A DNA stretch of 64,000 nucleotides, from the IMG/VR virus record IMGVR_UViG_3300020186_000013, positions 1 through 64,000 of that record. One strand, given 5' to 3'. This document shows positions 1,349-63,218 of the stretch, piece by piece. Under the pieces are notes generated by a model. It was not told where the DNA came from, ran no database searches, and saw only the letters and a program-made list of their open reading frames with translations. The position numbers and the translations under genes are program-made. Every line of letters begins with the position of its first letter. The first letter of the stretch is position 1.

Positions 1349-1364
1349 TAGAAACTGGAATCTA
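1349..1364. promoter_or_regulatory. 16-bp palindromic operator-like site TAGAAACTGGAATCTA
   Basis: Intergenic; identical copy at 55980, variants elsewhere. Confidence 0.65.
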
Positions 1365-1366
1365 CA

Positions 1367-1798
1367 TCAGTACCGCTTGCCGTGCTTAACGGGGCGGGTG
1401 TGGTTGAACGCCATCTTGGCCACGATGGCCTGGCCCAACCGGAGCTTCAGGGCCGCACTCAGGTCCATGATGCGGATCACCGCGTCGGCCAACTCGATCT
1501 CGATGTTAGTGAACTGCGGGCACTTCTCGTCCGTCTCGTCGAAGCCGTGCTTGCGGTGGCTCTCCATCGCCTCAGACAACTCGCTAACCGTCAGCATCAG
1601 CTTCCCGGCGAAGTTCTGCTGCTCGGTCCCGGTGCCGCGACAGTCCGGGCACTTGACCGGGCTGCACTCGTCGCAGTGGACGTCGACGCCGGTTCCCTTG
1701 CACTCCGGGCAGTCCTTCCAGAACTCCTTACTCTTCGCCCACGCCAGAATCTTCTCGCCGTAAGTGTTGACGGCGTCGGCGAACAGTTCGTCACTCAT
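1367..1798 (-). CDS. MazG-like NTP pyrophosphohydrolase with inserted CxxCxGxG zinc finger
   Basis: KLMLTVSELSEAMES...EIELADAVIRIMDL...AKMAFNHTRP.KHGKRY; insert CPECKGTG...CPDCRGTG. Confidence 0.8.
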   Translation of the reverse strand: MSDELFADAVNTYGEKILAWAKSKEFWKDCPECKGTGVDVHCDECSPVKCPDCRGTGTEQQNFAGKLMLTVSELSEAMESHRKHGFDETDEKCPQFTNIEIELADAVIRIMDLSAALKLRLGQAIVAKMAFNHTRPVKHGKRY

Positions 1799-2067
1799 GC
1801 CTTCTTCTTTCCGACGGGCGGTTTCACACCCGGCTTCTTAGGTGGAGGGTTCTCCCAGGCGTCCACAATACGCTGGAAGCGTTCCTTGAACTTCTTCGTC
1901 ATTTTGCCGATCTGGTCGTCGACCTTCGTCTTCTTCGCGTCACTGACGCGGGACTCGAACATCTTGGCCAGTTCCTCGGTCGACTGGCCGTGGGCCACCT
2001 TGAGAGCGGCCAAGAGGACCTTGGCTGCCATGTATCGAGCGGACGGTGTGCGGCTTGCGTTTGCCAT
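1795..2067 (-). CDS. hypothetical basic protein
   Basis: ATG at 2067 with AAAGGGAG RBS; stop overlaps next start. Confidence 0.6.
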   Translation of the reverse strand: MANASRTPSARYMAAKVLLAALKVAHGQSTEELAKMFESRVSDAKKTKVDDQIGKMTKKFKERFQRIVDAWENPPPKKPGVKPPVGKKKA

Positions 2068-2151
2068 CGTAACTCCCTTTAGTGACACGACCGGGGACTC
2101 GGCCACGGTCGTGACGATCATCTCTTTCACGGCACGAAAGATCAAGAGGAG

Positions 2152-4269
2152 CTACGCCTTCAACGCGGCGTCCGCCCGCTTGGCCAGCTCGCCCTGGAGG
2201 GACTCGGTCGTCCAAAACTCCAGTGCCTTCGGGTCGCCCGCGTCGATGTCGTACGGGTTACTCTTCATCCCGTACACCCACAACAGATCGTCGACGATCT
2301 TGGTGCGGGACTTGTACCAGAGCGTGGGGAACTTCGCCCGTGTCAGGTTGAACACCTGCCCGAAGATGTCGCGGATCTCGGTCTCCGCGAACGGTGCGGT
2401 GCGGAGTTGGACGACGTGCCGCAGAGCCCGGATGTTCGCCGTCATGCCGATCTCGTTCGCCTGCCCGTTGGGGGCAATGCGACGGATAGCACTGGTGATG
2501 GCCTTCCGCTTGTCGAAGTTGAACGAGTCGTCCGGCACCCACTTCAAATCCTCGCGGAGCGTGCCTGCCGGGATGTTCGCCCACGCCGCCAGGCACTTCG
2601 ACTCGTTCGGCTTGGCCGTCAGACCCGCCTCGGCCGGGGCGTGCGGGAACTTCGGGTTCGGCTTACGCAGGCCGAGCTTGCACTCGGTCAGGTACACCAG
2701 GTCTTCGATGCACGACAGCCCTTCGAGCCACAGATCCTTCACGGGATTGAGCAGATTGCTCCAGACCAGGTCGATGCTGTCCAGGCGGCAGTACCGCCCC
2801 GACGTCTGCGAGTACGCCCACCCGGCCCGCTGACGCACCTGCTCGTGGGTGTTACCACACCAGAACGCAAGGCCGTGACAGCGAACATAGATAATCCCGT
2901 CCTGCGTCTTCGGACAGTACACCTTCCCGTGATAGTCCTCCTCCCAGAAGTGTTGGGTCTTGATGATCGACACCGACTTACGACTCACACTGACGACCCA
3001 ACTCGGCTTCGTGTGCCGGATGATGCCATCGCGGAAGTCTCGTGTGACGCCGGAGCGGTCGTCTTTTCGCACGTTGGCACACAGACCGAGTCGCCCTAAG
3101 AGAACCTGCCACTGACCGGCGGCGTGCTCCGTTTCGCAGTACAAGGCTTGGTGGCCGTTCGAGTGATGTACGGTCCCGTCACCAGACATTGCCGCAGCGA
3201 AGAAGCCACGAAGAAGTCGCCGACTCAGATTGAACAGATCAGTAACGAAATGCCGCTCCTTGTTGTTAGGCCCGATCATCTGTTTAGCCCACGCCGACAA
3301 CTCACCGTCCGAGATCGTGAAATACTCGATCCGGCTGTCAGAGTACGGGAAATACTCGATCCGGCTGTCAGAGTACGGGCCGTGGTGCCGCCACCGGCTC
3401 CCAAACAACTCGCTCATGAGCGAGTGCAGTGCCGGCAGGTTGCCGACCTTCGACTGGTTGATGACGCACTGGTTCGGACGCTCGACGGAAAAAGTACCGT
3501 CCGTTGCCATCCATCCCAACCACTCCATCAGGCGGTAAGCGTCGTAGGTGTGTTCACCGATCTGGAACTGCTCGCGGTCGTCTTCGGCCGCAAATGAAAC
3601 TTCGTGGTCGATGACGATGGGTTTGCGAAACACCTCCGAGATCGGCACCTTCTCGGAGTAAAGAGCCACGTTCTCGGCCAGCGACAGCCCACGAGCCCGA
3701 CGCGGATTGACGCGAGCCGCCCACAACAAGTGGTCGGGCGTCATGCCGGGCGACACCATCTGCCCGGTCTTCCAACCGAGTAACTTCCCGTCGTAGTCGA
3801 AGCTGTGGACGCTGGCAGGAGTCTGCCACTTAGCCTTCCTGGTGTCCGGGTTCAGCGTCAGGAGTTCATCAGCGACGGTCAAGTCTTCGATCTTCTTCCA
3901 ACCGCTGTTCGTGTAGACTTCCGTGCCCTGCTCGTAGCAGTAGACCCGCGAGCAGTCCGTCACGAGGAAGTTGATGTTGCAGTGCTCGAACACCGAGCCG
4001 TGGCCCGTGTCGAAACAGCTCTCCAGGTTGGCCTTCACCGACCGAACCTTGCTCACGTTCGCGTTCTTGCCCACCACCAGGCTCTTGTAGCACAGCTTGG
4101 CGTACATGGAGCACAGCGACTCGCCGCCGGAGATGCCCGCCACGCGGGCGGCCAGGTAGTCGTCCCAGAAGTCCATCTGCTTGGTCTTCTCCAGGTACGC
4201 CTTCACACCCGGCTCGTGGATCTCCGTGAACCCGGTCAGGAACACTTCCGGCTTAACGAGCTGACCCAT
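2152..4269 (-). CDS. thyX: flavin-dependent thymidylate synthase ThyX, intein-containing
   Basis: GHGSVFEH, spliced SRVY|THEQVRQRAGWAYSQTSGRY, ANIRALRHVVQLR, AETEIR. Confidence 0.9.
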   Translation of the reverse strand: MGQLVKPEVFLTGFTEIHEPGVKAYLEKTKQMDFWDDYLAARVAGISGGESLCSMYAKLCYKSLVVGKNANVSKVRSVKANLESCFDTGHGSVFEHCNINFLVTDCSRVYCYEQGTEVYTNSGWKKIEDLTVADELLTLNPDTRKAKWQTPASVHSFDYDGKLLGWKTGQMVSPGMTPDHLLWAARVNPRRARGLSLAENVALYSEKVPISEVFRKPIVIDHEVSFAAEDDREQFQIGEHTYDAYRLMEWLGWMATDGTFSVERPNQCVINQSKVGNLPALHSLMSELFGSRWRHHGPYSDSRIEYFPYSDSRIEYFTISDGELSAWAKQMIGPNNKERHFVTDLFNLSRRLLRGFFAAAMSGDGTVHHSNGHQALYCETEHAAGQWQVLLGRLGLCANVRKDDRSGVTRDFRDGIIRHTKPSWVVSVSRKSVSIIKTQHFWEEDYHGKVYCPKTQDGIIYVRCHGLAFWCGNTHEQVRQRAGWAYSQTSGRYCRLDSIDLVWSNLLNPVKDLWLEGLSCIEDLVYLTECKLGLRKPNPKFPHAPAEAGLTAKPNESKCLAAWANIPAGTLREDLKWVPDDSFNFDKRKAITSAIRRIAPNGQANEIGMTANIRALRHVVQLRTAPFAETEIRDIFGQVFNLTRAKFPTLWYKSRTKIVDDLLWVYGMKSNPYDIDAGDPKALEFWTTESLQGELAKRADAALKA
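2851..3939 (-). mobile_element. intein (363 aa) with in-frame LAGLIDADG endonuclease in ThyX
   Basis: Starts CYEQGTEVYT, block B TPDH, LAGLIDADG-like WLGWMATDG and FFAAAMSGDG, ends VYCPKT...FWCGN, +1 Thr. Confidence 0.9.
3319..3378. repeat. perfect 30-bp tandem duplication (PYSDSRIEYF x2)
   Basis: GAAATACTCGATCCGGCTGTCAGAGTACGG twice, 3319-3348 and 3349-3378. Confidence 0.95.
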
Positions 4270-4946: not shown

Positions 4947-4949
4947 CGG

Positions 4950-11292: not shown

Positions 11293-11308
11293 TAGAAGCC
11301 GGTTTCTA
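11293..11308. promoter_or_regulatory. palindromic site TAGAAGCCGGTTTCTA
   Basis: Variant of recurrent 16-mer; overlaps upstream stop. Confidence 0.6.
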
Positions 11309-13384
11309 CTTCTTGTTCGCCTTGCCACCCGCCGCCGGCGGCGGGGTGGCGGCAGGATTCTTGCGAGCCGCAGCACGGGCAGCAGCGGCCTTGGCAGCCT
11401 GAAGCGTGTTCGCCATCTCGGCGTCCTTCTTCTTGGGCGACGCCACGGCCTCAGCCTCCTCGGTCTGCGTCCCCTTCTTACTCGCCGGCTTGGCAGCCGC
11501 AGCGGCCGGCTTCGCAACCGGCTTCGCGACAGGAGCTGCCGGTTTGGCCGCTGGCTTCGCGACCGGCTTGGCGGCGATCACCTCATCGAACACCTCGTCA
11601 CCGCTCGGCTTGGACTTGGGCTTGCCCGCCTTCGGCTTCACCGGGGCGACGACTGCTTCTTCCTCTTCTTCCTCGTCACCCTCCTCATCTACCTCCTCGT
11701 CGTCGTCTTCGTCACCCTCTTCAGCTTCCCCTTCGTCAGCGTCGCCTGCTTCAGGGTCGGCGTCGTCGGCCTCCTCATCGTCCTCAGCTTCGACGTCATC
11801 ATCGTCGTCAGCGTCGTCACCGTCGTCACCGTCGTCACCGTCATCGGCATCTTCGTCTTCGCCATCCTCGTCCTCCTCTTCCTCCTCGTCATCATCGTCG
11901 GCCGGTGGTGGTGGCGGGGGAGGCGTCTTGCCCTTCTTGGTCTTGACCGGTTCCTCTTCCTCAACCGGCGGGTCCTCGTCATCGTCGCCAGCGGTCGTGC
12001 CCGGCAGCGTCGGCTGGCTCACGTCCTTGCCCGCCTTCTTCTTTTTCTTCGGAGCGACCGGCAGCTCGTCATCGTCCGCACCGACCACCACAGTGCCGTC
12101 ATCGTCGTCATCGCCCGTGTCGGCAGGAATGACTGCCTCACCCGGATTCACAAACGACTTCGCGTTCACCAGGATCGGCTTGATCTGCTTGAGCCACTCG
12201 GGGTGATCGTTCAGACCGAAGATCAAAATGCCCGGCTCCTTGGCGAAACACCGAGCCATGACGTCGAGCTGCTCCTCGGGAGTCATAACGCGGACGAGGC
12301 CCTTCTGTATCACCTTGCCGGCGGCGTCGACCATATCGAACCACGGCATGCTCTTGTTGAAAATCTCGTCAACGGCGTCACCTTCGAGATCCGGCGTAAA
12401 CTCCTCGTCGTCGATCTTGACGGACTTGAGCAGGGCGACCTGGTACTTCCAGATGCCATTCTCGCCGCCCTCGGGGGACTTGCCGTCCCACGACGTGCAC
12501 CGGGCCATGCCCTCCTTCTCGGGGTGTAACTTCTTGTTGAACCGGGGATTGAAGACCGCGACGATCTTGCCCCCGACGATCTTGTTCTCCTTCGGGCGGT
12601 ACACGCCCAACGGATCGTGCAGGAACATCTTGCGGTACTCGCCGGGCTGAGCAGCCTCGGCGTCCTTACGCTTGATATTCATCAGGTCCTGCAACCCCTG
12701 GCCGGCCGACGCCGACAGCTCCAGGACCACGAGCGGGTCGCCGGGGTTGAGGCCGTACGGCACCTCACGCGGCTTGCCGTCCTTGATCATGTACGACGTC
12801 GGGCCGACCTTGTAGACGCCGCCCTGGGCCAAGTACATGTCCTTCGGCCACGAGATGCAAGAGCCCTTGTTCTTCGACCCCACCATGTACTTGTTCCACG
12901 ACAGCTTCCACCCATCCGTGCTCTCGCCCTTGATCGACGCCTTGTGGGCGTCGGAGCAGGCGTTAATGAACGGGAAGAACGGACTCAGCGGGCGGATCGC
13001 CTGGTCGATCGTCGGGTCGTGCAGAACGAAGCTCACCTTCGGGCAGTCGGGGTGCCCGAAGTATGCCGCCACAGCCGGCAGGTGACAGAAGAACGGCGTG
13101 AAGCCGGTCAACTTGTCCGACTTACGCCAGCTCCGCAACTGGGTCGTCGGGTTCTCCATGGACAACGCCGGAGCGAGGCGGCAGTACAGCGGCTCGCCGT
13201 CGTACTTGCCACGGATCACCTTGTACTTCGGGATGTTGTCGGAATCGTTGCTCACGTTGAGCACCATGGAGGAACCGCTGCCGCGATCCTCCTTGCCGCC
13301 GTGCTTCTCGTTGTCGTACGTCTCGGTCGTCATCGACGGCAGGTTCCGCTTGATGCGTCCGCGAGACTTATCAGACTCAGCCAT
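11306..13384 (-). CDS. large protein with long acidic tract and AKP-rich tail; candidate ssDNA-binding protein
   Basis: Adjacent to recA; D/E-rich low-complexity region followed by AAKPVAKP repeats; function inferred from context. Confidence 0.55.
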   Translation of the reverse strand: MAESDKSRGRIKRNLPSMTTETYDNEKHGGKEDRGSGSSMVLNVSNDSDNIPKYKVIRGKYDGEPLYCRLAPALSMENPTTQLRSWRKSDKLTGFTPFFCHLPAVAAYFGHPDCPKVSFVLHDPTIDQAIRPLSPFFPFINACSDAHKASIKGESTDGWKLSWNKYMVGSKNKGSCISWPKDMYLAQGGVYKVGPTSYMIKDGKPREVPYGLNPGDPLVVLELSASAGQGLQDLMNIKRKDAEAAQPGEYRKMFLHDPLGVYRPKENKIVGGKIVAVFNPRFNKKLHPEKEGMARCTSWDGKSPEGGENGIWKYQVALLKSVKIDDEEFTPDLEGDAVDEIFNKSMPWFDMVDAAGKVIQKGLVRVMTPEEQLDVMARCFAKEPGILIFGLNDHPEWLKQIKPILVNAKSFVNPGEAVIPADTGDDDDDGTVVVGADDDELPVAPKKKKKAGKDVSQPTLPGTTAGDDDEDPPVEEEEPVKTKKGKTPPPPPPPADDDDEEEEEDEDGEDEDADDGDDGDDGDDADDDDDVEAEDDEEADDADPEAGDADEGEAEEGDEDDDEEVDEEGDEEEEEEAVVAPVKPKAGKPKSKPSGDEVFDEVIAAKPVAKPAAKPAAPVAKPVAKPAAAAAKPASKKGTQTEEAEAVASPKKKDAEMANTLQAAKAAAARAAARKNPAATPPPAAGGKANKK

Positions 13385-27785: not shown

Positions 27786-27801
27786 TAGAATCCAGTTATT
27801 A
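27786..27801. promoter_or_regulatory. degenerate palindromic site TAGAATCCAGTTATTA
   Basis: Gene junction; variant of recurrent 16-mer. Confidence 0.45.
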
Positions 27802-35152: not shown

Positions 35153-35375
35153 CGACCTTCCGGGCGATCTCGCGGAGGCTCATCTCCGGGTTATCAGCCT
35201 TGAGCTTCACGATCAACGGCACACGGCTCAACATGCCGTTGTACTTCACCCAACCAGGTAACTTCGAGTTGAGGACCTTGTACACCCGATGCGGGTGCAC
35301 CCCAACCTTGGCGGCGATGACCTTCACCGCCATCTTTGGGTTTTTCTTCTTCAGACTAACGATCTTGTCATCCAT
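35094..35375 (-). CDS. tandem HTH protein
   Basis: IAAKVGVHPHRVYKVL and LREIARKVGVSYQRVYQV. Confidence 0.7.
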   Translation of the reverse strand: MDDKIVSLKKKNPKMAVKVIAAKVGVHPHRVYKVLNSKLPGWVKYNGMLSRVPLIVKLKADNPEMSLREIARKVGVSYQRVYQVCNAHLPGWC

Positions 35376-36313
35376 CAGGCACTCCTCAGTTTGCCGTACG
35401 TCGACATCATCCGCACGCCGTGCACGGCATTCAAATAGTCGATCACCTGAGACGGCTCCGCTCGCCGAATCCAGCCGCCGGGGTACGGGGCCACCCGCAC
35501 CAGAGCGTACAGCAGCTGGGTACGACTCAGTTCCGTCGATCGGCCCCGGAGGTACTTGGTTTTAACGGTCTCCAGCGGGCTCTCGGCGTCCTCGTGGACC
35601 ACGAACAGCCCGCCACGGTAGCGGAGGGGCTGCTCCTTCGAGAAGTCGATCGACTGAATGACCACGCCACCTAGAAACTGGCTTTTAGGGATGTCAACTA
35701 ACTCGCCCTGCCGCTGGCTGACAACGCTGGCGGTCGCGAGACGCAGCTTGTCCCGAAACACCTCGCCGACCGTCATCGCCTCGTGGTAGGGCTTGGCCGT
35801 CACGAAGTCCTGCCGCATCGTCGAGATCAACTTGACCGGCGGCAGGTCGGGCTTCAGCCCCTTGTCAGAGAAGAACGCCTTCTCCATCCGCTTGAATGGT
35901 TCCAAGACGTTGTTCCGGACCCAACAGAACGGGCAGATGTGGTCGAATCGGCACGACTGCCCAGACGCCTTCTTGGTCCGCACTCCCACGGGCGGGCAGT
36001 TCCGGACGAACTGGAACTTCTTGTCGTCGGCCAGCTTGTCCCAGCCCTCATTCCGGAGGTTGGTCAGGAGCATGCGGTACAGTCCCGACGTCCTGACCGC
36101 GAGTCGATCACTGGCGGCGGTCCGCTCCTTGACGTCCATCCCGTCGTAGAGGCGGCGGATCAGACACAGGCGACACGCCGTCTGGCGGTACGACTTGGGC
36201 GTGAAGTTCAACTCCCACTTGATGTCGGTCGGGGATGCGGTGGACACAAGCAACTCCAACTTTAGGTAGTTATAACGAACCAAAGTTTTTTTCCGGTGCC
36301 GAGTACCCCCCAA
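35375..36313 (-). CDS. hypothetical protein with C..C..ICPFC motif
   Basis: 312-aa ORF; start uncertain. Confidence 0.6.
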   Translation of the reverse strand: MGGTRHRKKTLVRYNYLKLELLVSTASPTDIKWELNFTPKSYRQTACRLCLIRRLYDGMDVKERTAASDRLAVRTSGLYRMLLTNLRNEGWDKLADDKKFQFVRNCPPVGVRTKKASGQSCRFDHICPFCWVRNNVLEPFKRMEKAFFSDKGLKPDLPPVKLISTMRQDFVTAKPYHEAMTVGEVFRDKLRLATASVVSQRQGELVDIPKSQFLGGVVIQSIDFSKEQPLRYRGGLFVVHEDAESPLETVKTKYLRGRSTELSRTQLLYALVRVAPYPGGWIRRAEPSQVIDYLNAVHGVRMMSTYGKLRSA

Positions 36314-43208: not shown

Positions 43209-43224
43209 TAAATTCCAGTTTCTA
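43209..43224. promoter_or_regulatory. palindromic site (reverse complement TAGAAACTGGAATTTA)
   Basis: Gene junction; one mismatch to the 1349/55980 copies. Confidence 0.6.
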
Positions 43225-47200: not shown

Positions 47201-47416
47201 GAGAGGCCATCCGGCGGCGACGTGTACTGCATTACCCGCAACCCGACCGCCTCGGACGACTTCGCCCAGGGGGTCAACATCGGGTGTTGTGCGTTGTTCC
47301 AGTTGAGCGGTCAGTGGCCCGACGTGGCGGCGGCGAACCACCTGATCCTGCCGCTCGACGTCCTGTCCCATGTCCACCCGCAGCACCAGCCGGACTGGGA
47401 CGACGCGGGGAGCTAG
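44207..47416 (+). CDS. terminase large subunit (GpA-like), intein-containing
   Basis: LKTGRQVSKST Walker A, RGIPADKVVIDE|CQE Walker B after splicing, AGTPK, Zn site C..C/CAKCRK, nuclease LAVDWGGGG, DDFAQ. Confidence 0.85.
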   Translation: MSTSKKLTIAEQLKIKKKKQQSAFLQTASLSKKEMGLTGFEDEWTKRLIIAQHYLKKSNVASLRPILPALLQLKGKPYHLNDHFPFEPFFRTRMPYMTLLKTGRQVSKSTSLSSQGIIFSNAIPYFSTLYVTPLYEMIRRFSHNYVRQFIETSPVKRLFMNSKTINSVLQRSFRNGSTMYFSFAYLDAERTRGIPADKVVIDESVRLGTMISTHTGSRPIETFSPGDAVLGFDEAGHVRKDEVVKCSDHGVRDCYRFEFSGGSAVEATSDSWLATTAGWKRVEAVITDLSTRADDAGFDVGRRVSAEHRQAFGVHESSRLEAARLQLPKVPGVIRVRTHASQESEELRLRRVVESVADSTIGGFAGYRFLVSPGRQEACDVGVARQDDVGSGRVVVHGRRLAPTADGRVQHAGFHVGGSETPGELVDGSRGGRESRENHVAAQPDCELLDRATVGRLDAYAGGTDPTVRVPGDDLQTGPACEGRGPDLSLVLEGVRSGYERATGVRHGRAETVLPLVNVQGRAAQRTQRNADGETRQAGREERQAAGGLCDGLGYPSQVRAGEGSTPVREEPGEETGVQEGVACLQEVDLVRVTWTGKHRVFDLETKNHNTFLAGGVAVHNCQEMNYDFLSIIHETLSGSPFGLKQYAGTPKSLENTIEKLWTDSSQAEFAIKCHHGGCNYWNVPALSHDLVKMIGPWHSGISEQCPGIVCAKCRKPIDPRRNGRWIHAQPNVRWSFAGYHIPQIIMPMHYATPKKWDMLVGKMQGRGNTPMNVFFNEVCGESYDVGSKLVTVTELQAAACLPWENKIEQAEKHLDQYLYKILAVDWGGGGGKLRNSAAKPGSEQRERTSYTVLVVMGMRPDGKIDVIWGLRSLRTHAHVHEAELCIAAIQRFKCSHFVHDFNGAGAIRETLVRQAGFPMGNIIPIAYHASAKKNIMVHKPPTDDLPRDWWTVDKSRSLQLTCELIKSGQLRFFKDDYRSSDDAGLIRDFLALIEEKTERPSGGDVYCITRNPTASDDFAQGVNIGCCALFQLSGQWPDVAAANHLILPLDVLSHVHPQHQPDWDDAGS
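44816..46069 (+). mobile_element. intein (418 aa) in terminase Walker B
   Basis: Starts SVRLGTMIST..G.RPIE, ends VFDLETKNHNTFLAGGVAVHN, +1 Cys. Confidence 0.88.
45087..45986 (+). CDS. LAGLIDADG homing endonuclease encoded in +1 frame inside the intein
   Basis: MMLGSMLGDGYL and AVAWWYMDDGSL, FNTQGFT, LIRPYV...MTYKL, C-terminal CHWC/CCRS..C and basic tail; frame open from 44916. Confidence 0.85.
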   Translation: MMLGSMLGDGYLRNTGKHSAFTSRHGWKQHAYNCRKFQVLSEFVRTPPRKVKNYGYGEWSSLWQTRQSEALQDIASLCLRDGKKRVTSEWLDRMTWEAVAWWYMDDGSLQLRTAVFNTQGFTSAEVKLLANWLTVRGVDAKAARITSRHNPTASYWIVRLSVDSTRTLAALIRPYVFPEMTYKLDLPAKAEALTCHWCSKAFVPATNGQRVYGTGEQKPCCRSSTCKAERHKELNETLMAKPGKRGEKNAKQREGYATDLDTRRKYEREKAARLYAKNREKRLAYKRAWRASKKSISSG

Positions 47417-49636: not shown

Positions 49637-49652
49637 TAGAAACTGGCTTTAA
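49637..49652. promoter_or_regulatory. degenerate palindromic site TAGAAACTGGCTTTAA
   Basis: Gene junction. Confidence 0.45.
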
Positions 49653-50125
49653 GGTCTCGGCTGGTCCAGCAGCCTCTCCATTGCTGCCGCGAAGGGAGGA
49701 TGGAACGACGCCCAATCGTCCAGCGTCAGAAAGTACACGACGTCCGCCCCGATGCCGTTCTTCTTAATGAGCTCGTCCAACTCTTCGGCGATCTCCTTGA
49801 TGTTCGCTTGGAAGCCCGGAAACAACTCGGTGTCGGAGTCGCTCGCGTCCATGACCGTGCCCAGCGTCGTCTTCGACGACCGCGACCAGCACTCCTCTTG
49901 GTCCATGGCGGGGTCGAAGCGAGCTTCGTTGTCGCGGATGACGACCATGAGGAGCCGTTTGAGGTTCCACGTCATACCGAAGTTTTGCAGGATGCTGTTG
50001 AACATCTGCAACGACCGGATGGACTTGTGCAGTTCCTTTTGGTTGCGGTTGTGTGCGGCCCTCCGCAGAGTGCCCGCCTCGTTTTCGATCTCCCGCCAGG
50101 CGTTCGCTATCATTCGCTGGTCCAC
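49649..50125 (-). CDS. hypothetical protein, paralogue of 49018..49617
   Basis: WNLKRLLMVV...YFLTLDDW. Confidence 0.65.
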   Translation of the reverse strand: MDQRMIANAWREIENEAGTLRRAAHNRNQKELHKSIRSLQMFNSILQNFGMTWNLKRLLMVVIRDNEARFDPAMDQEECWSRSSKTTLGTVMDASDSDTELFPGFQANIKEIAEELDELIKKNGIGADVVYFLTLDDWASFHPPFAAAMERLLDQPRP

Positions 50126-52260: not shown

Positions 52261-52268
52261 ACTGTCTC

Positions 52269-52831
52269 CTAAGTTCGATGGGGATAAAGGTTGACGTACC
52301 TTGATGGCGTTGTCAGAATCTTTCAGTCCTAAGTTCTGTGCGTGCGTGAGCTTACCGCTGAGTTCGATTTGCCCAGTTAAGCACCCGGCGTATCGTGTCA
52401 GGGATTTGCGAGATTTTGTAAGAAAGACGACGGCTAAGTTCGACGTGCGGAGAGTCCCTGATACTCGCGTTGCACATTTCCTGACCGGATAAACTTGGTT
52501 TGAACGTCCGCCCTAAGTTCGATTTCAGACGTATACACCAACACGTACGACTTTCCGATGAACTTCGGGTCAGCATTAAGTTCGAGGCCGATCCGACTGA
52601 GTTCCGACTCCCGGTCTGTTATGGCAGACCCACGACAAAATCTGTCACACGTTCGACAGCTACCTAACTCCTTACACCGCCGCTACTTCTGCCAAGTTCG
52701 AGGGCGGTGTCGGTTTTCCCCGGAGCCTAAGTTCGATGTGCCGGAAATAATGTTTGAAAACCTTCTCTGGATTATTTCCGCCTCGAAGATCCCCCAGCGG
52801 TCGCACGGTGCGACCGCCGGATCGAACTTAG
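52269..52831. repeat. cluster of ~11 CTAAGTTCGA(T)-like boxes plus hairpins; candidate replication origin or major regulatory region
   Basis: Boxes near 52269, 52329, 52358, 52434, 52513, 52576, 52597, 52648, 52692, 52727 and inverted 52821; largest non-coding stretch in window. Confidence 0.7.
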
Positions 52832-52876
52832 AGGAGCCCATCATTCGCTCCAGGATCGCGTTTACGGGGCATTCAC

Positions 52877-54550
52877 CTACGAGTCGCCTTCTGCCCCGCC
52901 CGTGTCGTGGATCGGCTGCTGGAAGCCCAGGGCGGCGGTCATGAGGTGACCGCTGCCGAAGTTGGCCTGGACGTAGAGGATCGCCCCGTTCTGCCGGGCG
53001 ACCTTAACCAGGTACGCGGGCAGGTCATTCTCGACACTGGTTGAGGGTGCCTCGAAGCGGATCTCCTTACCCGCCATTAGCAGCCGCCCGTGGTACTTCG
53101 TGCGGCCGTCTCGCAGGACGATACGGTCGAACCGGAGGTAGGCGTTCATGATCGGCCGCAGGCGGGTCTTGTGGTTCGGACTGTGGTAGTACAGGTTGCC
53201 GCCCTCCTCGACGTACGCGGCGTTGGCCCTCGGGGCCGGGGTCACCCGCCGCTCCTTCGCCGGCTCACACAACCTGTTGGCGATGGCAGCGGCGTCCGAG
53301 GTCAACTCCTTACGGAGGTCACTGATGTCGACCTTCTCCCGTTTGAGCCCCAACAGCAGCCCTTCAGCCTGGTGGTCCTCGGCCCCCGTCAGGAAGGCCG
53401 ACACCGCCACCCGCCACGGCCTCGCTTGCCTGACGATCTTCTGGAACATCTGCCCGGCGTCGCAAGACCGCAGGTAGTGGTCGACGCTCCGCGAGGACAG
53501 GTCCTCGGGTGAGGCGAGGGAGATGTGGCCGTTCACCTTCATGGCGTGCAGCACGGTCGCGGCGTCCATACGCCAACTCCACAGCACCACCTTGCGGCCC
53601 GCCAGGAGCTGCCACGCCCGGTGCGTCCACTGCGTCTCCCCGTGGTGGTAGGCGACCATGGGGAGCGGGTTCATGCTGTTCTTGGCGTTACGGACCTGGA
53701 TGCGGGCCAAGAGCATCGGGCTGTTGACGGCGATGACCGTAGCGTTGGAGGCGTCGGACGGCATGACGCAGTCGAGGCCCGCGAGCCCGACTTCGTCACG
53801 GCCTCGGAGTCCGCCCTTCATGGACTCGATCGACTTGACCACCATGTCCTCCTTCGAGCCGCGTCGGCCTACGAAGAAGAACGCACTGAGACGGTCGGGC
53901 AGGTCGTAGTACGGCACGACGAGGATCTCGTTCCAGCCCCTCCCCCGGAACAGCGGGGTGCCGCTGTGCCGGAGCATGCGGTTCACACCCGGCACGGTCG
54001 TTCGGGGACAAAAGGCTTTGGACGCCAGCCCCGCCAGCGACGCCCCCAAGATCTTGCCAGGGCCACGCCGCCACAGCTCGGGGCTCAGGTTGATCGTCAG
54101 GTGGAACCGGGTAAGGAGAAAGTTGTGGCCGGGGGTCCGCGAGTGGGACTCCAGGTTACGCTGAGCGTTCGCCCATAACCCACGCATCGTGTCGCGGCGG
54201 GCAACGATCTCGTCGACGTGCTTGCGGATGCGTTCGTCGGTGAACGTGCCGTCCGGGACTGCGATCTGGCTCTCGGTAATCTTGAGCAGCGTCTCGGGGA
54301 GTGGTAGTTTCCAGACGCTGGCGGCGAGGTCGATCATGTCGCCCGACGACCCGCAGCCGAAGCAGTTGCACCAGACGGCCTTCCGGATCGGGTCGTCGTA
54401 AACGTGAAACCGATCTCCTCCGCACAGCGGACATACGGTACGCTGGGGAAGTGCCTGACCGTTAGTGGGAATGCCAAGAACGGCAAACACCTCCGTCCAC
54501 CGAAGGTGAACGTCCAGGGATAATCTTAAAGGAGCCCCCATCCATGCCAC
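52877..54550 (-). CDS. primase-like protein (N-terminal Zn-binding domain, degenerate TOPRIM)
   Basis: CPLCGG....CNCFGCGSSGDMIDL, LVVPYYD; no EG.xD catalytic motif seen. Confidence 0.6.
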   Translation of the reverse strand: MAWMGAPLRLSLDVHLRWTEVFAVLGIPTNGQALPQRTVCPLCGGDRFHVYDDPIRKAVWCNCFGCGSSGDMIDLAASVWKLPLPETLLKITESQIAVPDGTFTDERIRKHVDEIVARRDTMRGLWANAQRNLESHSRTPGHNFLLTRFHLTINLSPELWRRGPGKILGASLAGLASKAFCPRTTVPGVNRMLRHSGTPLFRGRGWNEILVVPYYDLPDRLSAFFFVGRRGSKEDMVVKSIESMKGGLRGRDEVGLAGLDCVMPSDASNATVIAVNSPMLLARIQVRNAKNSMNPLPMVAYHHGETQWTHRAWQLLAGRKVVLWSWRMDAATVLHAMKVNGHISLASPEDLSSRSVDHYLRSCDAGQMFQKIVRQARPWRVAVSAFLTGAEDHQAEGLLLGLKREKVDISDLRKELTSDAAAIANRLCEPAKERRVTPAPRANAAYVEEGGNLYYHSPNHKTRLRPIMNAYLRFDRIVLRDGRTKYHGRLLMAGKEIRFEAPSTSVENDLPAYLVKVARQNGAILYVQANFGSGHLMTAALGFQQPIHDTGGAEGDS

Positions 54551-55716
54551 CTCTGTCAGACCACGTCTCCGACGTGAACGGTGAGGAACTGTCCAGGCTG
54601 AGTAAGCTGTACGAGTTCCCCGACTTCGTAAAAAAAGCCAACATGGACCAGGTGTTCAGGCCGAACGACCTGGCCGTCACGGTCTATGCCGACCCCATCC
54701 GCAAGCAGTTCCCCTGCCACAACGCCGCCTCAACCTGGCTGAGCACGGTCTACTTCACCGAGAAGAAGGCCGAGTTCCACCCCAAGGACCAGGTCCGCAT
54801 CAAGCAGCGGCTCGACCACTACGTCGGGTACTGGCGGATCAAGGAGTCGGTCGACAAATATATGGTCAAGCACGCAGAGTATAACAAGGACGCCGAAGCA
54901 GGTCTGCCCGACTCGTCATACGCCTTCGTCTGGACCGACAACGAGACCGGGCGGAAGGACCGTCACCTGCGGATGGTCAACGCCCGTGAGGTCAAGGCGG
55001 CAGCTGATTACCTGCACGAGTACGCCGACCGGTTCACCTTCCGCGATCGTAACACGATTGCCAAGAAGATTCTCACCAAGGCCGCGAGCTTCGGTGCCGC
55101 CGTCGGTAACCGGATCGAGTTCCTGGAGAAGCAGGCCGGGCACGGCGTGTGCGACCCCGACGAGGTCGTCGCTATGCTCACCGACCGGGCCAAGCTGGCC
55201 ACCCTGCCGGCCTTGAAAGACCAGATCCTCAAGCTGGCCCACATCGTCAAGACCCAGCCACGCCAGGCCCTCACGCCCGACATGATGGTCAAGCTGGCTG
55301 AGACCGTCGACCAGATCGACCGGACGATCGGCCTGGCCGGCAAGTACACCGACAAACTGCCCCGCCCCGAAGACGTGATCTTCAAGGCGACCTTCAGCAA
55401 GGCAGCGTCCGACATCGCCGAGCACTGTGCCCTGACCTCGGGCAACATCTACAAGAAGGCCGACTTCGCCAAGATCGCCCTCGACGATGTGCGGTCCCTG
55501 TTCGGGACAGACTTCGCTGAGGAGGTCAAGGCCGGGTTGGACAAGGTCGACCCAGAGAAGATGGCCGAACTGGTCCACACCCTGCCGCGACCCGACGCCG
55601 AGCTGTTCGACCGGCTCATGTCGGACAGCGGCGTGTTCCCGCAGATGAACAAGGCCGCGAGTGCTAAGCAGGGCTTCTCGGCCCAGGAGCTTGCGGCACT
55701 CGCGGCAGGCTACTAA
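54544..55716 (+). CDS. hypothetical protein rich in KxA motifs, possible virion/head-internal protein
   Basis: 390 aa, AAGGAG upstream, strong codon bias, 15 KxA tripeptides. Confidence 0.7.
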   Translation: MPPLSDHVSDVNGEELSRLSKLYEFPDFVKKANMDQVFRPNDLAVTVYADPIRKQFPCHNAASTWLSTVYFTEKKAEFHPKDQVRIKQRLDHYVGYWRIKESVDKYMVKHAEYNKDAEAGLPDSSYAFVWTDNETGRKDRHLRMVNAREVKAAADYLHEYADRFTFRDRNTIAKKILTKAASFGAAVGNRIEFLEKQAGHGVCDPDEVVAMLTDRAKLATLPALKDQILKLAHIVKTQPRQALTPDMMVKLAETVDQIDRTIGLAGKYTDKLPRPEDVIFKATFSKAASDIAEHCALTSGNIYKKADFAKIALDDVRSLFGTDFAEEVKAGLDKVDPEKMAELVHTLPRPDAELFDRLMSDSGVFPQMNKAASAKQGFSAQELAALAAGY

Positions 55717-55979: not shown

Positions 55980-55995
55980 TAGAAACTGGAATCTA
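55980..55995. promoter_or_regulatory. palindromic site TAGAAACTGGAATCTA
   Basis: Identical to 1349 copy; gene junction. Confidence 0.65.
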
Positions 55996-56490
55996 CGTCA
56001 CACGACCGCTCATCTGGTGCTGGTTGCGGTCCTTGTGCTCGCCGTAGCAGAACTTGCGGGCGTACATGCCCTCCTTCGCCAGGGCGTCCAGCCACTCCGT
56101 CTCGCCCACCATGCTGTCGCCGTGCTCAAACCCGTACGCCGCCGTGGGGCTGAACATGAACCAGCCCCGCTTCTCCTTCTTCGACTCCTCGGTCAGGCAC
56201 GGCACGTACACGATACGGCAACCACATTCCAGCAGGCCGTAGATGCCGATCGCCATGTACAGGTCCGGGGCCAGCATGATGCTGCCGACGTGGGCCTCGC
56301 CACGGGTAGAGCTGTTCCACGCCTCGGCCAGCTTGAAGTCGGGGATGCCGAACGCCCGCTCCAGGCACTTCTTCCCTTTGGCACTGACGTCACACAGGAC
56401 GCGGTAACCGGTCTTGTCAGCCTCGCCCGTCAGGATGAAGATCCCGAGCTGTTCGAGGTCACGCAGGCAACTGACGACTTTCATGGTCAC
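55993..56490 (-). CDS. hypothetical protein
   Basis: LTGEAD..G.RVLCD phage-type motif. Confidence 0.65.
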   Translation of the reverse strand: MTMKVVSCLRDLEQLGIFILTGEADKTGYRVLCDVSAKGKKCLERAFGIPDFKLAEAWNSSTRGEAHVGSIMLAPDLYMAIGIYGLLECGCRIVYVPCLTEESKKEKRGWFMFSPTAAYGFEHGDSMVGETEWLDALAKEGMYARKFCYGEHKDRNQHQMSGRVT

Positions 56491-59666: not shown

Positions 59667-60057
59667 TGAGTTTTTTCCGTTTAGCGTAGTGCAGGTTCTT
59701 GTACTCCGGGCGGCTTTGTAGCTCTTCCCGACACTCCTTTTGCACGGCATAGCGAGCCGCCTTGAGAAGCGGGAAGCGTGCCCTCCCGTCGTCGAGAGTG
59801 TCTATGTGCAGCGGCCCCAGTGTGCACATGTTTGCCAGCAAGGCACACGGGTACTTGGCCCACCGCAGGACTACCAGGGCGTTGTCGTCGTCGCCGTTGA
59901 GGCACCACGACGTGTCGACGCACGCATGCAGATGGCTAAGAGCCTTCAGATGGCTCCTGACGTGTCCGTTGCGGATGTCCTCGACGACCCCGTCGACGAG
60001 CTTCTGGACCTCCTCCTGGTAGAGGCCCTGCTCCTCCTGCTCTTTCAGGTCGCTCAC
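59611..60057 (-). CDS. hypothetical protein
   Basis: GTGA overlap with sigma gene stop. Confidence 0.55.
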   Translation of the reverse strand: MSDLKEQEEQGLYQEEVQKLVDGVVEDIRNGHVRSHLKALSHLHACVDTSWCLNGDDDNALVVLRWAKYPCALLANMCTLGPLHIDTLDDGRARFPLLKAARYAVQKECREELQSRPEYKNLHYAKRKKLNGPTKEKGSEQTPQADGQ

Positions 60058-60650
60058 TTGTACTCCTCCCACAGCTCGCGTGTGTGTAAGTGCATGTACT
60101 GCTCGCACTTCCGAAGTGCGTTCACGATCCTCTGTCGCACTACCTCCTTGGAGACCGGGATCGGAAACGTATTGCCGATCTCGCCGAGAGTGAGTTCATT
60201 CCAAAACCGCTCGTGGATGACGTGGCGATGCTTGGCGATCAGGTGTCGCAGCATCGTAGCGACATGGTCACGACGTTCCTCGTCCGCCAGGTGCTGCTCT
60301 CCCTCGTTGTCAACGGTCGCAAAAACGGGGGCCGTGCCGAGTACGTACGAGTTTCCTAGCTCACTGAACAATGCGACATACGGCCGACGGTAAATCCGTC
60401 CCCTGCGACGTCGTATCGTGGCGAACCAATGCTGCTCGGCCCGCCACGACAGTATCTCGAAGTACATGCACTTGACGCAGTACGTGCTGAACTTCCCCGG
60501 ACCGGGTTTTTAGTTGTTGACCGCGTGCATGTACCCGATGCCGGCCGGTCCCATTAAGTCTAAGGCAGACTCCCCCGCTCTTTTGAACCGGGTCACGGCC
60601 CAGAAGAGCAGCGGGAGGTGCTTCTCGGAGTCAATCGGTGCCGCCGTCAC
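60054..60650 (-). pseudogene. sigma70-family factor with in-frame TAA at 60510-60512
   Basis: Region 2 HLPLLFWAV...DLMG..GIG...AVNN*KPG.GKFSTY is in frame with region 4 LTLGEIG...VSKEVVRQ; GTG start coupled to upstream stop. Confidence 0.75.
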
Positions 60651-62244: not shown

Positions 62245-62708
62245 GTCTCCTGCGTGGGGTCGTGCTCGTAGTCGTCGTCTTCCTGGTTGGCCAGCGAGTC
62301 CTTCACGAACTCCGGGTCGGCCAGGCCGATGTTCATCTCGACCGTGGCCACCCAGTAACGATCGTCGCCCTCGACGCGGAACAGCACGGTGGGGTGCATC
62401 CCCGAGCCGTCGAGCATCCGCCCGCCCGCCATGAGCACCTCCGCGATGGTGCCGCCGGGCGTGATCGACAACTCGTCGTCGTCGAGGATGACCTCGCGGA
62501 CCACGGCCGTCTTGGACAACTCGTCCGAGACCGAGTTGCCGTAGTTGATCTTCTCGCACAAGACGTCGATGTCGGACGCCGAAGGAGGGTCGACATCGTA
62601 GAAGTGGTCGCTGTCCTTCATGGCGAGCATCAGGTCTTGGTTGAAGCTCTCTTGAAGGCGTCGGAGGGCGAACAGCACGGCGGCTGTTTCCTGCTTGTTG
62701 AGTGTCAT
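62241..62708 (-). CDS. hypothetical protein
   Basis: ETAAVLFALRRLQ...IDVLCEKIN phage-type motif. Confidence 0.6.
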   Translation of the reverse strand: MTLNKQETAAVLFALRRLQESFNQDLMLAMKDSDHFYDVDPPSASDIDVLCEKINYGNSVSDELSKTAVVREVILDDDELSITPGGTIAEVLMAGGRMLDGSGMHPTVLFRVEGDDRYWVATVEMNIGLADPEFVKDSLANQEDDDYEHDPTQET

Positions 62709-62923
62709 CACAACCTTTCGGTTTGGTCCTTGTCCGCCTTGACGGACTCGGTCTCGCTGTCTTCGACGATCCACGCCTTGGCGGGGAAGCGACCCGACAG
62801 GGCTGCCTGCACGGCGTTGTGCTCGGCCTCCTGCTGCGTCGCCCCCTCGACGGTGATGTCCATCGTCGAGTCAACCTGCTCACGCCGGAGGAGGGTTACC
62901 CGCCACCGCTTTTTCTTTGCCAC
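62708..62923 (-). CDS. small hypothetical protein
   Basis: ITVEGATQQEAE motif. Confidence 0.55.
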   Translation of the reverse strand: MAKKKRWRVTLLRREQVDSTMDITVEGATQQEAEHNAVQAALSGRFPAKAWIVEDSETESVKADKDQTERL

Positions 62924-63116
62924 TGTCCTTCTCCTTGGTGTCGACCAGGAGCCACACGCGGACCCAGACCTGCTCGGTGCCCAGCGACACGTGGTCGGGC
63001 ACGTCGTGCTTGATGCCCTTCTCGGCGAGCATCTTCACGGTCGCGTCGACGTACTGCTGCTTGGTGGCCTCGCGTTGCTCGGGCGTCAACTTTTCGGGGT
63101 CGTATACGATAGGCAC
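62880..63116 (-). CDS. small hypothetical protein
   Basis: VS.G..VWVRVW motif. Confidence 0.5.
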   Translation of the reverse strand: MPIVYDPEKLTPEQREATKQQYVDATVKMLAEKGIKHDVPDHVSLGTEQVWVRVWLLVDTKEKDSGKEKAVAGNPPPA

Positions 63117-63134
63117 GTTTGGTCTCCGGGAATA

Positions 63135-63218
63135 GGGTCATGGTTTTGGAATTCCATGACCCCATAAAAAATCGAACTTAGGGTCGAGTTAGAAACCGGA
63201 TTCTATGTCGAACTTAAG
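63135..63218. promoter_or_regulatory. composite site: hairpin + TCGAACTTA box + TAGAAACCGGATTCTA palindrome + TCGAACTTA box
   Basis: GGGTCATGG/CCATGACCC stem; ATCGAACTTAG at 63171; palindrome 63190-63205; GTCGAACTTAA at 63207. Confidence 0.65.

What the first reader, a model, noticed from the sequence alone, without database searches (positions are those of the whole stretch)
1349..63205. Window-wide 16-bp palindrome (idealised TAGAAACCGGTTTCTA) at gene junctions
Seen: copies at 1349 and 55980 (identical), 11293, 27786, 43209, 49637, 63190, plus one intragenic copy at 35672. The motif is AT-rich in a GC-rich genome, and seven of eight copies lie between or on a stop codon and the next RBS, in either orientation. 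Inference: operators of a phage-encoded dimeric regulator (candidates: XRE 32137, tandem HTH 35094), or parS-like / nucleoid-organising sites for the ParB-like protein.
Basis: partly seen in the sequence, partly recalled or inferred. Interest (0 to 1): 0.7.

Follow-up and report, generated by a model that had tools for sequence, protein, structure and literature searches.

The report
Evenly spaced palindrome array, jumbo phage
A 16-bp AT-rich near-palindrome recurs about every 8 kb along a 208-kb uncultured jumbo phage genome, at places that are conserved in distant relatives, which marks it as a chromosome-wide set of protein recognition sites of a kind that has not been described for phages.

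Summary
The window is the first 64 kb of a 208-kb metagenomic jumbo phage that has its own multisubunit RNA polymerase and nearly all genes on one strand. The whole genome carries 26 copies of an asymmetric near-palindrome, cTAGAAAC-YGG-MWTCTAg. Eighteen lie outside coding sequence, often supplying the TAG stop of the upstream gene.

Three further results:
- **Even spacing.** The copies are evenly spaced (gap CV 0.35 against about 1 for random placement).
- **Conservation across relatives.** Relatives with 40-60% protein identity carry lineage-specific variants (core AAAnCCrnTTT) in the same gene junctions, and even inside the same genes. These arrays are also regular.
- **Orientation.** Orientation is not conserved and does not follow gene direction.

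This argues against promoters, terminators, RNA hairpins and gene-specific operators. It points to chromosome-scale recognition sites for a phage protein.

The XRE and tandem-HTH genes are not conserved with the array, and no ParB domain is present. The best candidate I found is a Rep_1-fold zinc-ribbon protein (35375-36247), which suggests dispersed origin-like loading or nicking sites. That step is inferred and weak.

The parts
1349..1364 (.). Array copy (TAGAAACTGGAATCTA), in the 28-nt spacer between genes 1367-1798 and 826-1338.
   Evidence: The same junction holds a site in relatives G003 and G006 (slot 73|74).
11293..11308 (.). Array copy. Its TAG is the stop of gene 11306-13384, and an intrinsic-terminator-like hairpin follows.
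27786..27801 (.). Array copy (4 mismatches to the ideal). Its TAA is the stop of gene 27799-28332, and the next start is 5 nt away.
   Evidence: The slot is shared with G003 (60|61).
35672..35687 (.). Array copy inside gene 35375-36247, where it encodes PKSQFL. This is a 3-codon insertion relative to the homologues in G003 and G006.
   Evidence: Slot 59|60 is occupied in G003 and G006 at other exact places.
43209..43224 (.). Array copy. Its TAG is the stop of gene 43222-43566, and the JGI-called next gene starts 11 nt after it.
   Evidence: The slot is shared with G003 and G006 (57|58).
49637..49652 (.). Array copy (4 mismatches), overlapping the stop of gene 49649-50125.
55980..55995 (.). Array copy identical to 1349. 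Its TAG is the stop of gene 55993-56484, at a convergent junction with the plus-strand gene 54544-55716.
   Evidence: Logan contigs span it without a consistent break.
63190..63205 (.). Array copy between genes 63214-63720 and 62880-63116, flanked by two copies of the CTAAGTTCGA repeat.
35375..36247 (-). Candidate trans-acting factor (inferred): a 290-aa basic protein with a Cys4 ribbon and a Rep_1 (rolling-circle initiator) fold. Tyr255 is invariant, and the HUH histidines are not conserved.
   Evidence: for the fold. for co-occurrence with dense arrays. for a site inside or within 560 bp of the gene in four genomes.

Best explanation
The eight copies belong to a genome-wide array of 26 in this 208-kb phage. 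The array consists of evenly spaced, orientation-free recognition sites for a phage-encoded, sequence-specific DNA-binding protein. That protein acts on the chromosome as a whole rather than on individual genes. I put this general layer at about 0.75.

The mechanism I think most likely is this. The sites are dispersed origin-like sites recognised by the Rep_1-fold zinc-ribbon protein encoded at 35375-36247. The protein binds the near-palindrome and nicks or opens the AT-rich arms. DNA synthesis by the phage's family-A polymerase, or torsional relief, can then start at many points. Even spacing keeps the longest unserved stretch short.

What is shown:
- the array is real and far beyond chance;
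- it is regular;
- it prefers non-coding DNA;
- site positions are conserved across relatives while the motif sequence co-varies by lineage;
- orientation carries no constraint;
- the candidate protein has the Rep_1 fold.

What is inferred:
- that a protein binds the sites;
- that it is this protein;
- that it nicks or loads anything.
For: **Reality and regularity.**
- There are 26 sites at 18 bits or more against 0 in simulated genomes.
- The gap CV is 0.35, and 0 of 50000 random placements were as regular. Intergenic regions themselves are clumped, with CV 1.4.

**Clade-wide occurrence.**
- L078 (beta' 71% identical) has the same motif at four syntenic places.
- G006 has 37 sites (CV 0.34), G003 has 37 (CV 0.40), and G004 has 22 or more (P 0.005). 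G008, G009 and G010 have about 26 each.
- Occupied slots between or inside adjacent core genes are shared far above chance. G000 and G003 share 15 against 3.2 expected (P 6e-11). G003 and G006 share 14 against 3.4 expected (P 7e-9).
- The motif variant is uniform within a genome and differs between genomes. That is the signature of co-evolution with one trans-acting factor.

**DNA-level, non-directional function.**
- Orientation is 17:9 on a one-strand genome. It agrees at only 5 of 11 shared slots between G000 and G003 (my count by eye from the sequences).
- Intragenic sites are kept while the encoded peptide changes (slot in:19).
- Within slot 59|60 the exact place moves.
- The 24-mer folds more weakly than random genomic 24-mers.

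**Candidate protein.**
- It has a Rep_1 fold.
- Only 9 G000 genes are present in all three dense-array genomes tested (G003, G004, G006) and in neither of the two sparse-array genomes (G005, G007). This gene is one of them.
- A site lies inside or within 560 bp of the gene in four genomes.
- No topoisomerase IA or II domain was found in six genomes.
Against: - The two metal-binding histidines of the HUH motif are not conserved in the family. The Pfam Rep_1 model does not match. Nuclease activity is therefore doubtful.
- G005 is a complete genome without the Rep-like gene. It still has a recognisable and somewhat regular array (CV 0.54, P 0.004).
- The gene profile rests on what may be a single loss event.
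- A separate iteron-like cluster at 52261-52876 looks like a conventional origin.
- No read-level data exist to show nicks or replication starts.
- Sites at stop-RBS junctions would suit a transcriptional roadblock equally well.
Confidence: 0.33

Rival explanations
1. The sites bind an unidentified dimeric phage protein that nucleates there and spreads, slides or blocks RNA polymerase. This would make it a genome-wide silencer, insulator or partition adaptor, like KorB on OB sites, ParB on parS, or the L5 repressor on stoperators. Even spacing would reflect the limited range of each site.
For: - The sites are near-palindromes with symmetric flanks.
- 18 of 26 lie in short junctions, often on the stop codon and 3-25 nt before the next start.
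- About 8 of 18 intergenic sites sit next to a terminator-like hairpin, judged by eye.
- The genome encodes a TubZ/RepX-like tubulin of the plasmid-partition type.
- The co-evolution and orientation evidence is the same as for the best explanation.
Against: - No ParB_N domain was found here.
- The HTH candidates are not conserved.
- The alpha-CTD-like protein is missing from G006. The tubulin has no hit in G005 and is not among the 9 genes shared by all three dense-array genomes.
- Intragenic copies conserved in place are odd for a roadblock on a one-way gene train.
- No candidate binder was found.
Confidence: 0.3
2. The motif is the promoter recognised by the phage's own multisubunit RNA polymerase. 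This would match the AT-rich, highly conserved early-promoter motifs of other RNAP-encoding jumbo phages.
For: - The phage encodes beta, beta'N and beta'C subunits.
- Such phages carry 30-40 copies of an over-represented AT-rich motif that proved to be early promoters (PMC7598289; PMC5312081).
- The copy number and the AT-richness in a 62% GC genome fit.
- Concerted change of all sites between lineages also occurs with phage RNAP promoters (own knowledge of the T7 group).
Against: - Orientation is mixed on a one-strand genome and is not conserved between relatives.
- In G006 the site is often a near-perfect 20-24-bp palindrome.
- Six copies lie upstream of a terminator-like hairpin rather than after it.
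- Several copies leave only 3-12 nt before the start codon.
- Sites are spread evenly over all modules, and none precedes the most conserved structural gene.
- Only one RNAP set is present.
Confidence: 0.1
3. The motif acts in RNA. It would be a hairpin for processing, antitermination (nut-like), mRNA export or translational control between cistrons.
For: The motif lies between stop codon and RBS in polycistronic units. It precedes terminator hairpins at several places, as nut sites do. A palindrome would give a hairpin in either orientation.
Against: - The mean MFE of the 24-mer is about -2.3 to -2.8 kcal/mol in both senses. That is weaker than random genomic 24-mers at -4.1 to -4.8.
- The commonest orientation puts a C-A mismatch at the centre in the sense strand.
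- Conserved intragenic copies and even spacing have no RNA rationale.
Confidence: 0.04
4. The sites are bound by a host factor, such as a LacI-family or nucleoid protein. The lineage-specific variants would track different hosts.
For: The 12-bp core GAAACCGGTTTC equals that of the Pseudomonas PtxS operator TGAAACCGGTTTCA (papers listed). Variants differ between relatives with GC content from 44 to 71%.
Against: Positions are conserved across phages that presumably infect very different hosts. I know of no host factor with such regular site demands. The host is unknown, so the idea cannot be tested here.
Confidence: 0.07

Closest known systems
Stoperators of mycobacteriophage L5 and other Cluster A phages (own knowledge: Brown et al. 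1997, EMBO J)
   Same: Dozens of copies of one short conserved site are scattered over the whole phage genome. They sit in very short intergenic spaces, often overlapping stop codons, and are bound by one phage protein.
   Different: Stoperators are 13-bp asymmetric sites whose orientation follows the direction of transcription. They are not reported as evenly spaced or as conserved inside genes. The binder is the lysogeny repressor of a temperate phage.
KorB-OB sites of plasmid RK2, ParB-parS, and the dispersed centromere sites of phage-plasmid N15 (own knowledge)
   Same: These are 13-16-bp palindromes dispersed over a replicon. A dimer that acts at a distance recognises them, and some sites lie away from promoters.
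   Different: No ParB_N domain is present in this phage. These systems have 4-12 sites, which are not regularly spaced.
Early-promoter motifs of RNAP-encoding jumbo phages such as phiKZ and AR9 (PMC7598289, PMC5312081)
   Same: An AT-rich, highly conserved motif is detectable by over-representation at 30-40 copies per genome. The phage has its own multisubunit RNAP.
   Different: Those motifs are directional, centred near -10 of mapped starts, and placed before early operons. Here orientation is free, some sites are intragenic, and spacing is regular.
Localized nick sites of T5, phiKMV-like and tf/LUZ24-like phages (PMC3517423)
   Same: A short consensus recurs along a phage genome, and its biological role is unknown.
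   Different: Known nick consensuses are asymmetric, and all copies lie on one strand (14 in tf). No nick has been shown here.
Double-strand origins of rolling-circle replicons with Rep_1 (pC194/pUB110-type) initiators, and baculovirus hr palindromes (own knowledge)
   Same: A Rep_1-fold protein occurs together with an inverted-repeat recognition site. Baculovirus hr elements are imperfect palindromes dispersed around a large viral genome that serve as origins and enhancers.
   Different: Rolling-circle replicons have one origin. The HUH histidines are not conserved here. Baculovirus hr elements are clusters of 30-bp palindromes at about 8 loci.
REP/BIME extragenic palindromes of enterobacteria (own knowledge)
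   Same: These are repeated palindromes just after stop codons in operons.
   Different: REPs are GC-rich, form stable hairpins, are mobilised by RAYT transposases, and are neither evenly spaced nor positionally conserved across distant relatives.

Membership tests
ParB-parS / KorB-OB | A ParB_N (CTPase) domain protein is encoded by the replicon. | tested here: not met
   PF02195 was not found in G000. Among four relatives it passes the family cut-off only in G003; G006 has a weak match below it.
ParB-parS / KorB-OB | A roughly 16-bp palindromic site is present in several copies. | tested here: met
Stoperator (L5-type) | Site orientation is tied to the direction of transcription. | tested here: not met
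   Orientation is 17:9 on a genome with 227 of 235 genes on one strand. It is not conserved at shared slots.
Stoperator (L5-type) | Sites lie in short intergenic spaces at stop codons. | tested here: met
   18 of 26 sites are outside CDS (P 8e-17). The motif's TAG or TAA serves as the stop at 9 or more sites.
Jumbo-phage RNAP early promoter | The motif is directional and lies upstream of operons, with a start site at a fixed distance. | tested here: not met
   Orientation is free, some copies are intragenic, and some copies precede terminator hairpins. Start sites themselves are not testable because no RNA runs hold this phage.
Jumbo-phage RNAP early promoter | There are two RNAP sets, one of them virion-borne. 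| tested here: not met
   There is a single match each for Rpb2_6 and Rpb1_2.
Intrinsic terminator / structured RNA element | The sequence forms a stable hairpin. | tested here: not met
   The 24-mer's MFE is weaker than that of random genomic 24-mers.
Rolling-circle origin with Rep_1 initiator | The initiator has the Rep_1 / HUH-endonuclease fold. | tested here: met
   The model has pLDDT 90. It matches Rep_1 clusters at TM 0.60-0.61, and AFDB 'Replication protein' clusters at E 3e-6 and weaker. Atlas features score 0.96.
Rolling-circle origin with Rep_1 initiator | The HUH metal-binding motif and the catalytic tyrosine are present. | tested here: inconclusive
   Tyr255 is invariant, but no conserved histidines appear in the 12-sequence alignment. 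The Pfam Rep_1 HMM is silent.
Rolling-circle origin with Rep_1 initiator | A site-specific nick occurs at the repeat. | not testable with these tools
   Only assembled contigs of the source runs are available.
Localized phage nick sites (T5, tf, phiKMV type) | All sites lie on one strand and have an asymmetric consensus. | tested here: not met
   The site is a near-palindrome and occurs in both orientations. Compare PMC3517423.
LacI-family operator | A LacI-type HTH protein co-occurs with the sites. | tested here: not met
   The only match is a 12-bit hit in the non-conserved tandem-HTH gene. None was found in seven relatives.

The most novel reading that the evidence does not exclude
A widespread, uncultured clade of roughly 170-235-kb one-strand jumbo phages maintains a previously undescribed chromosome-scale cis-element system. 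It consists of 25-40 evenly spaced near-palindromes served by a domesticated rolling-circle-type (Rep_1-fold, HUH-less) protein. The sites would work as distributed replication-start or swivel sites. Selection would act on coverage of the genome rather than on the exact position of each site.
Probability: 0.25. Interest if true: 0.85.

Novelty: new variant of a known kind. Interest (0 to 1): 0.74.

Why it matters
Dispersed binding-site arrays are known from stoperators, OB and parS sites, and baculovirus hr elements. Here the spacing itself appears to be under selection. Sites are regular in every genome examined. They are conserved by neighbourhood rather than by exact place or orientation, and they are tolerated inside genes.

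That pattern points to a process with a limited reach along DNA, such as replication start, torsional relief, clamp loading or spreading. Such a process would act in a very large and environmentally widespread phage group that has no cultured member. The beta' subunit alone has over 600 relatives in public data.

If the Rep-like link holds, it would be a new use of a rolling-circle initiator fold inside a large double-stranded DNA phage. It would also give a direct handle on how jumbo phages copy or manage 200 kb of DNA. The motif is a practical marker for this clade as well.

Tried and rejected
**Artefact explanations**
- Long repeat or circular-permutation artefact for the identical copies at 1349 and 55980: the flanks are unrelated.

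**Looking for relatives and read-level data**
- A close cultured relative: none in INPHARED by DNA or protein.
- G001 looked at first like an independent relative with the motif. It is the same phage, with identical gaps.
- RNA data: no run holds this phage, only relatives' conserved genes.
- Contig breaks at site 55980 as a proxy for nicks: no consistent break. One contig of the same phage (G001) ends 47 bp from site 35672, which is anecdotal.

**Candidate binders**
- ParB: absent.
- Tandem-HTH and XRE-like proteins: not conserved in relatives.
- Alpha-CTD-like protein: absent from G006.
- LacI-type HTH, a lead from the PtxS operator: absent from relatives.
- TubZ-like tubulin with a neighbouring adaptor: the neighbours have no domain hits, and the tubulin is missing from G005 and from the gene set shared by the three dense-array genomes.
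- Pfam and PHROG scans of 30 small core proteins gave nothing useful.
- Complex prediction with the HTH protein and site DNA was not folded by the tool and gives no evidence either way.

**Other checks that led nowhere**
- My genome-wide terminator predictor was not specific: antisense hits equalled or exceeded sense hits. Terminator adjacency therefore rests on inspection.
- ECF-sigma promoter reading (GAAAC as a -35 element): there is no conserved -10 element downstream, and the information content ends about 12 bp from the centre.
- Foldseek against PDB for the Rep-like model: no significant match.
Full report
**What the sequence is.** The window is bases 1-64000 of a 208,145-bp IMG/VR virus record with 62.5% GC, estimated 93% complete by CheckV. 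It comes from a microbial-mat metagenome, and only assembled contigs of the source runs are available.
- By a codon-usage gene caller of my own, 227 of 235 genes lie on the minus strand and 94% of the DNA is coding. JGI gene calls for three stretches agree.
- The phage encodes one multisubunit RNA polymerase: beta at 142656-145772, beta'N at 140507-142255 and beta'C at 134565-138422.
- It also encodes a family-A DNA polymerase with an N-terminal UDG-like domain, an SbcC/Rad50-like ATPase, ThyX, a ribonucleotide reductase and a baseplate-J protein. A tubulin is present whose best solved relative is the plasmid protein RepX/TubZ.
- There is no close cultured relative. DNA search finds nothing, and the beta'C protein reaches only 26% identity in INPHARED.

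**The observation.** All eight copies exist at the stated coordinates.
- Five match the idealised palindrome with up to 3 mismatches against 0.06 expected. The other three differ at 4 positions.
- An iterated weight matrix finds 26 sites of 18 bits or more in the whole genome. Markov-simulated genomes gave none at that score.
- The true consensus is asymmetric. One half is almost invariably TAGAAAC. The other half is TAGAWKC or TAAAAGC, and the perfect palindrome never occurs. Flanking C and G extend the symmetry to 18 bp.
- Eighteen of 26 cores lie outside coding sequence against 5.9% expected (binomial 8e-17).
- At nine or more sites the motif's own TAG or TAA is the stop codon of the upstream gene. 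The next start often follows within 3-25 nt.

**Even spacing.** Successive sites are 4.3-10.6 kb apart, apart from one 550-bp pair that involves a weak site and one 16.5-kb gap.
- The coefficient of variation of the gaps is 0.35, against about 0.97 for random placement. None of 20000 to 50000 random sets was as regular, whether drawn uniformly or from gene junctions.
- Intergenic regions of 45 nt or more are clumped (CV 1.4). The regularity therefore belongs to the motif and not to operon layout.
- The eight intragenic sites fall in register with the rest.

**Conservation in relatives.** The beta'C subunit has more than 600 relatives in public data. The flanking gene order is the same in the contigs examined.
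- A contig whose beta'C is 71% identical carries the same motif at four syntenic places. Two of these are inside genes.
- I fetched whole IMG/VR relatives with 40-60% protein identity. All are one-strand and collinear, with 77 shared genes.
- Each carries its own variant around a shared core AAAnCCrnTTT:

| Genome | GC | Motif variant | Sites | Gap CV |
|---|---|---|---|---|
| G006 | 69% | gATCyMAAAACCGGTTTTKrGATc | 37 | 0.34 |
| G003 | 62% | TCTAAAAGCCAcTTTTTGGA | 37 | 0.40 |
| G004 | 50% | TCTAAAAAACGTTTTTTAGA | 22 or more | 0.59 |
| G008-G010 | 44% | TAAAWTCCRGAWTTTA | about 26 each | not computed |

- I defined a slot as the space between, or the inside of, adjacent shared genes. G000 and G003 share 15 occupied slots against 3.2 expected (P 6e-11). 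G003 and G006 share 14 against 3.4 (P 7e-9). G000 and G006 share 8 against 2.6 (P 8e-4).
- The array is therefore old, kept in place, and changes its sequence in concert within each lineage. That is what co-evolution with one trans-acting factor predicts.

**What kind of function the anatomy allows.** Orientation relative to the single direction of transcription is 17:9 here. By my inspection of the sequences, it agrees at only 5 of 11 slots shared with G003.
- In G006 the site is often a near-perfect 20-24-bp palindrome.
- Within a slot the exact place can move. In slot 59|60 the site sits inside gene 35375-36247 here, through a 3-codon insertion. It sits in the C-terminal tail of the homologue in G003 and is intergenic in G006.
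- At the intragenic slot in:19 the DNA follows each lineage's motif while the encoded peptide differs.
- Information content ends about 12 bp from the centre, and there is no conserved flanking element.
- As RNA or single-stranded DNA, the 24-mer folds more weakly than random genomic 24-mers.
- Where intergenic regions are long, the site may sit at either end. By eye, six sites precede a terminator-like hairpin and two follow one.
- Taken together, these points argue against a promoter, a terminator, a nut- or ops-like element, a strand-specific nick site, a translational operator and a gene-specific operator. They favour a symmetric DNA site whose job depends on being present once per 6-8 kb.

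**Who binds.**
- The tandem-HTH protein (35094-35375) has many PHROG HTH hits and a LacI-like recognition helix. The XRE-like protein (32137-32694) has one weak repressor hit. Neither has a homologue in G003, G005 or G006.
- No ParB_N domain was found here. Among relatives, only G003 has one above the cut-off.
- A stand-alone alpha-CTD-like protein (37949-38290) is shared with G003 and G005 but not with G006.
- The 12-bp core equals that of the PtxS operator, but LacI-type domains are absent from relatives.
- The one lead that survived is gene 35375-36247, which encodes a 290-aa basic protein with a Cys4 ribbon.
  - Protein-language features place it with Rep_1 clusters at a score of 0.96.
  - A confident model (pLDDT 90, pTM 0.88) matches Rep_1 clusters at TM 0.60-0.61 and AFDB 'Replication protein' clusters at E 3e-6 and weaker.
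  - Foldseek against PDB and the Pfam Rep_1 HMM are both silent.
  - Tyr255 is invariant, but the HUH histidines are not conserved.
  - Homologues occur in seven of nine relatives. The two without one are G005, whose array is degenerate, mostly intragenic and not slot-conserved, and G007, which has only about 7 strong sites.
  - Only nine genes of this phage are present in all three dense-array genomes tested and in neither sparse-array genome. This gene is the only one of the nine with a DNA-related fold prediction; five were not scanned at all.
  - A site lies inside or within 560 bp of the gene in four genomes.
  - These are weak and partly non-independent lines of evidence.

**Mechanism.** I am fairly confident, at about 0.75, that the copies are chromosome-scale recognition sites for a phage protein.
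- My preferred mechanism, at about 0.33, is that the Rep_1-fold protein recognises them as dispersed origin-like sites. It would nick or open them so that synthesis or torsional relief can begin at many points. Even spacing then minimises the longest unserved stretch, and orientation and coding context do not matter.
- No type IA or type II topoisomerase domain was detected in six genomes. That would give torsional relief a rationale.
- Against this stand four points: the missing HUH histidines, the array that persists in G005 without the gene, the separate iteron-like cluster at 52261-52876 that looks like a conventional origin, and the absence of any read-level data.
- An almost equally likely rival, at about 0.30, is a spreading, sliding or roadblocking regulator or partition adaptor of the KorB, ParB or stoperator type, with an unidentified binder.
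- The promoter reading has a literature precedent (PMC7598289, PMC5312081). I rate it at about 0.10 because the sites are not directional.

**Comparison and novelty.** The nearest known systems are listed under Closest known systems and tested feature by feature under Membership tests.
- None combines near-palindromic sites, free orientation, tolerance of coding sequence, conservation by neighbourhood and regular spacing.
- Full-text searches for such arrays in phages, and for the motif strings themselves, found nothing relevant.
- I therefore file it as a new variant of a known kind, namely dispersed protein-site arrays on viral or plasmid genomes. A fair chance remains that the mechanism is new.

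Noticed in passing
window 52261-52876: A 616-bp non-coding region holds six or more copies of CTAAGTTCGA(T) on the plus strand and one on the minus strand. It lies next to the divergent core genes 52877-54490 and 54544-55716. It looks like an iteron-type replication origin or control region. Further copies flank the array site at 63190 and lie near the site at 71680.
   Followed up: partly
window 60054-60650: There are sigma-factor pieces here. A Sigma70_r2 match at 60426-60626 contains a TAA. Sigma70_r4 lies in the 137-aa gene 60054-60467, which also has PHROG sigma hits. This may be a split or broken sigma gene. It has no homologue in G003, G005 or G006.
   Followed up: partly
window 37949-38290: A stand-alone 113-aa protein with an RNA polymerase alpha C-terminal domain (PF03118) and basic tails. 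It is shared with G003 and G005 but not with G006.
   Followed up: partly
window 35094-35375: A 93-aa protein made of two tandem HTH repeats. Its recognition helix (GVSYQRVYQV) resembles that of LacI. It is lineage-specific.
   Followed up: yes
window 2152-4269: A ThyX gene of 705 aa with a LAGLIDADG_3 domain in the middle, which looks like an intein or homing-endonuclease insertion.
   Followed up: no
window 44207-47416: A 1069-aa gene on the plus strand with a faint terminase-ATPase match, in an otherwise minus-strand genome. In another sample's contig (L146:544-2873) the same region is called as a 299-aa LAGLIDADG_2 protein plus a 477-aa protein.
   Followed up: no
L076:16425-17840 (genome 200425-201840): A tubulin/FtsZ-family protein whose best solved relative is the plasmid protein RepX/TubZ (4ei7, E 1.8e-10). 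PhuZ does not appear among the matches. It is present in G003 and G006 but not in G005.
   Followed up: partly
L072:16895-17833 (genome 120895-121833): A 312-aa protein that is 81-89% identical across relatives whose other proteins are 30-60% identical. It has no domain assignment. It may be the major capsid or a tail-tube protein. Pieces of it occur in soil, plant, wastewater and sediment RNA and DNA runs.
   Followed up: no
L072 (genome 117299, 117580, 118055, 119423) and genome 165043: A recurring arrangement of hairpin, T-run, then (A/T)CC(C/T)A(T/C)(C/T) (ACCCATC in the clearest copy), 20-50 nt before the start of structural-region genes. There are 7 on the gene strand against 1 on the other. 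It may be a late promoter or leader motif distinct from the palindrome.
   Followed up: partly
L075:2077-2226 (genome 166077-166226): Two adjacent tRNA genes, Arg-TCT and Met-CAT, lie just downstream of array site 166340.
   Followed up: no
G001 (IMGVR_UViG_3300020596_000027), its end corresponding to window 35734: A 59.8-kb contig of the same phage from another sample ends 47 bp from the intragenic array site at 35672. Its other end is not near a site. This is anecdotal.
   Followed up: partly
genome 72810-76317, 201873-203611 and 204394-205206: There are at least five glycosyltransferase-domain genes (GT9, GT2 twice, GT1/GT4 and TOD1-like). This may point to glycosylation of DNA or of virion proteins.
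   Followed up: no
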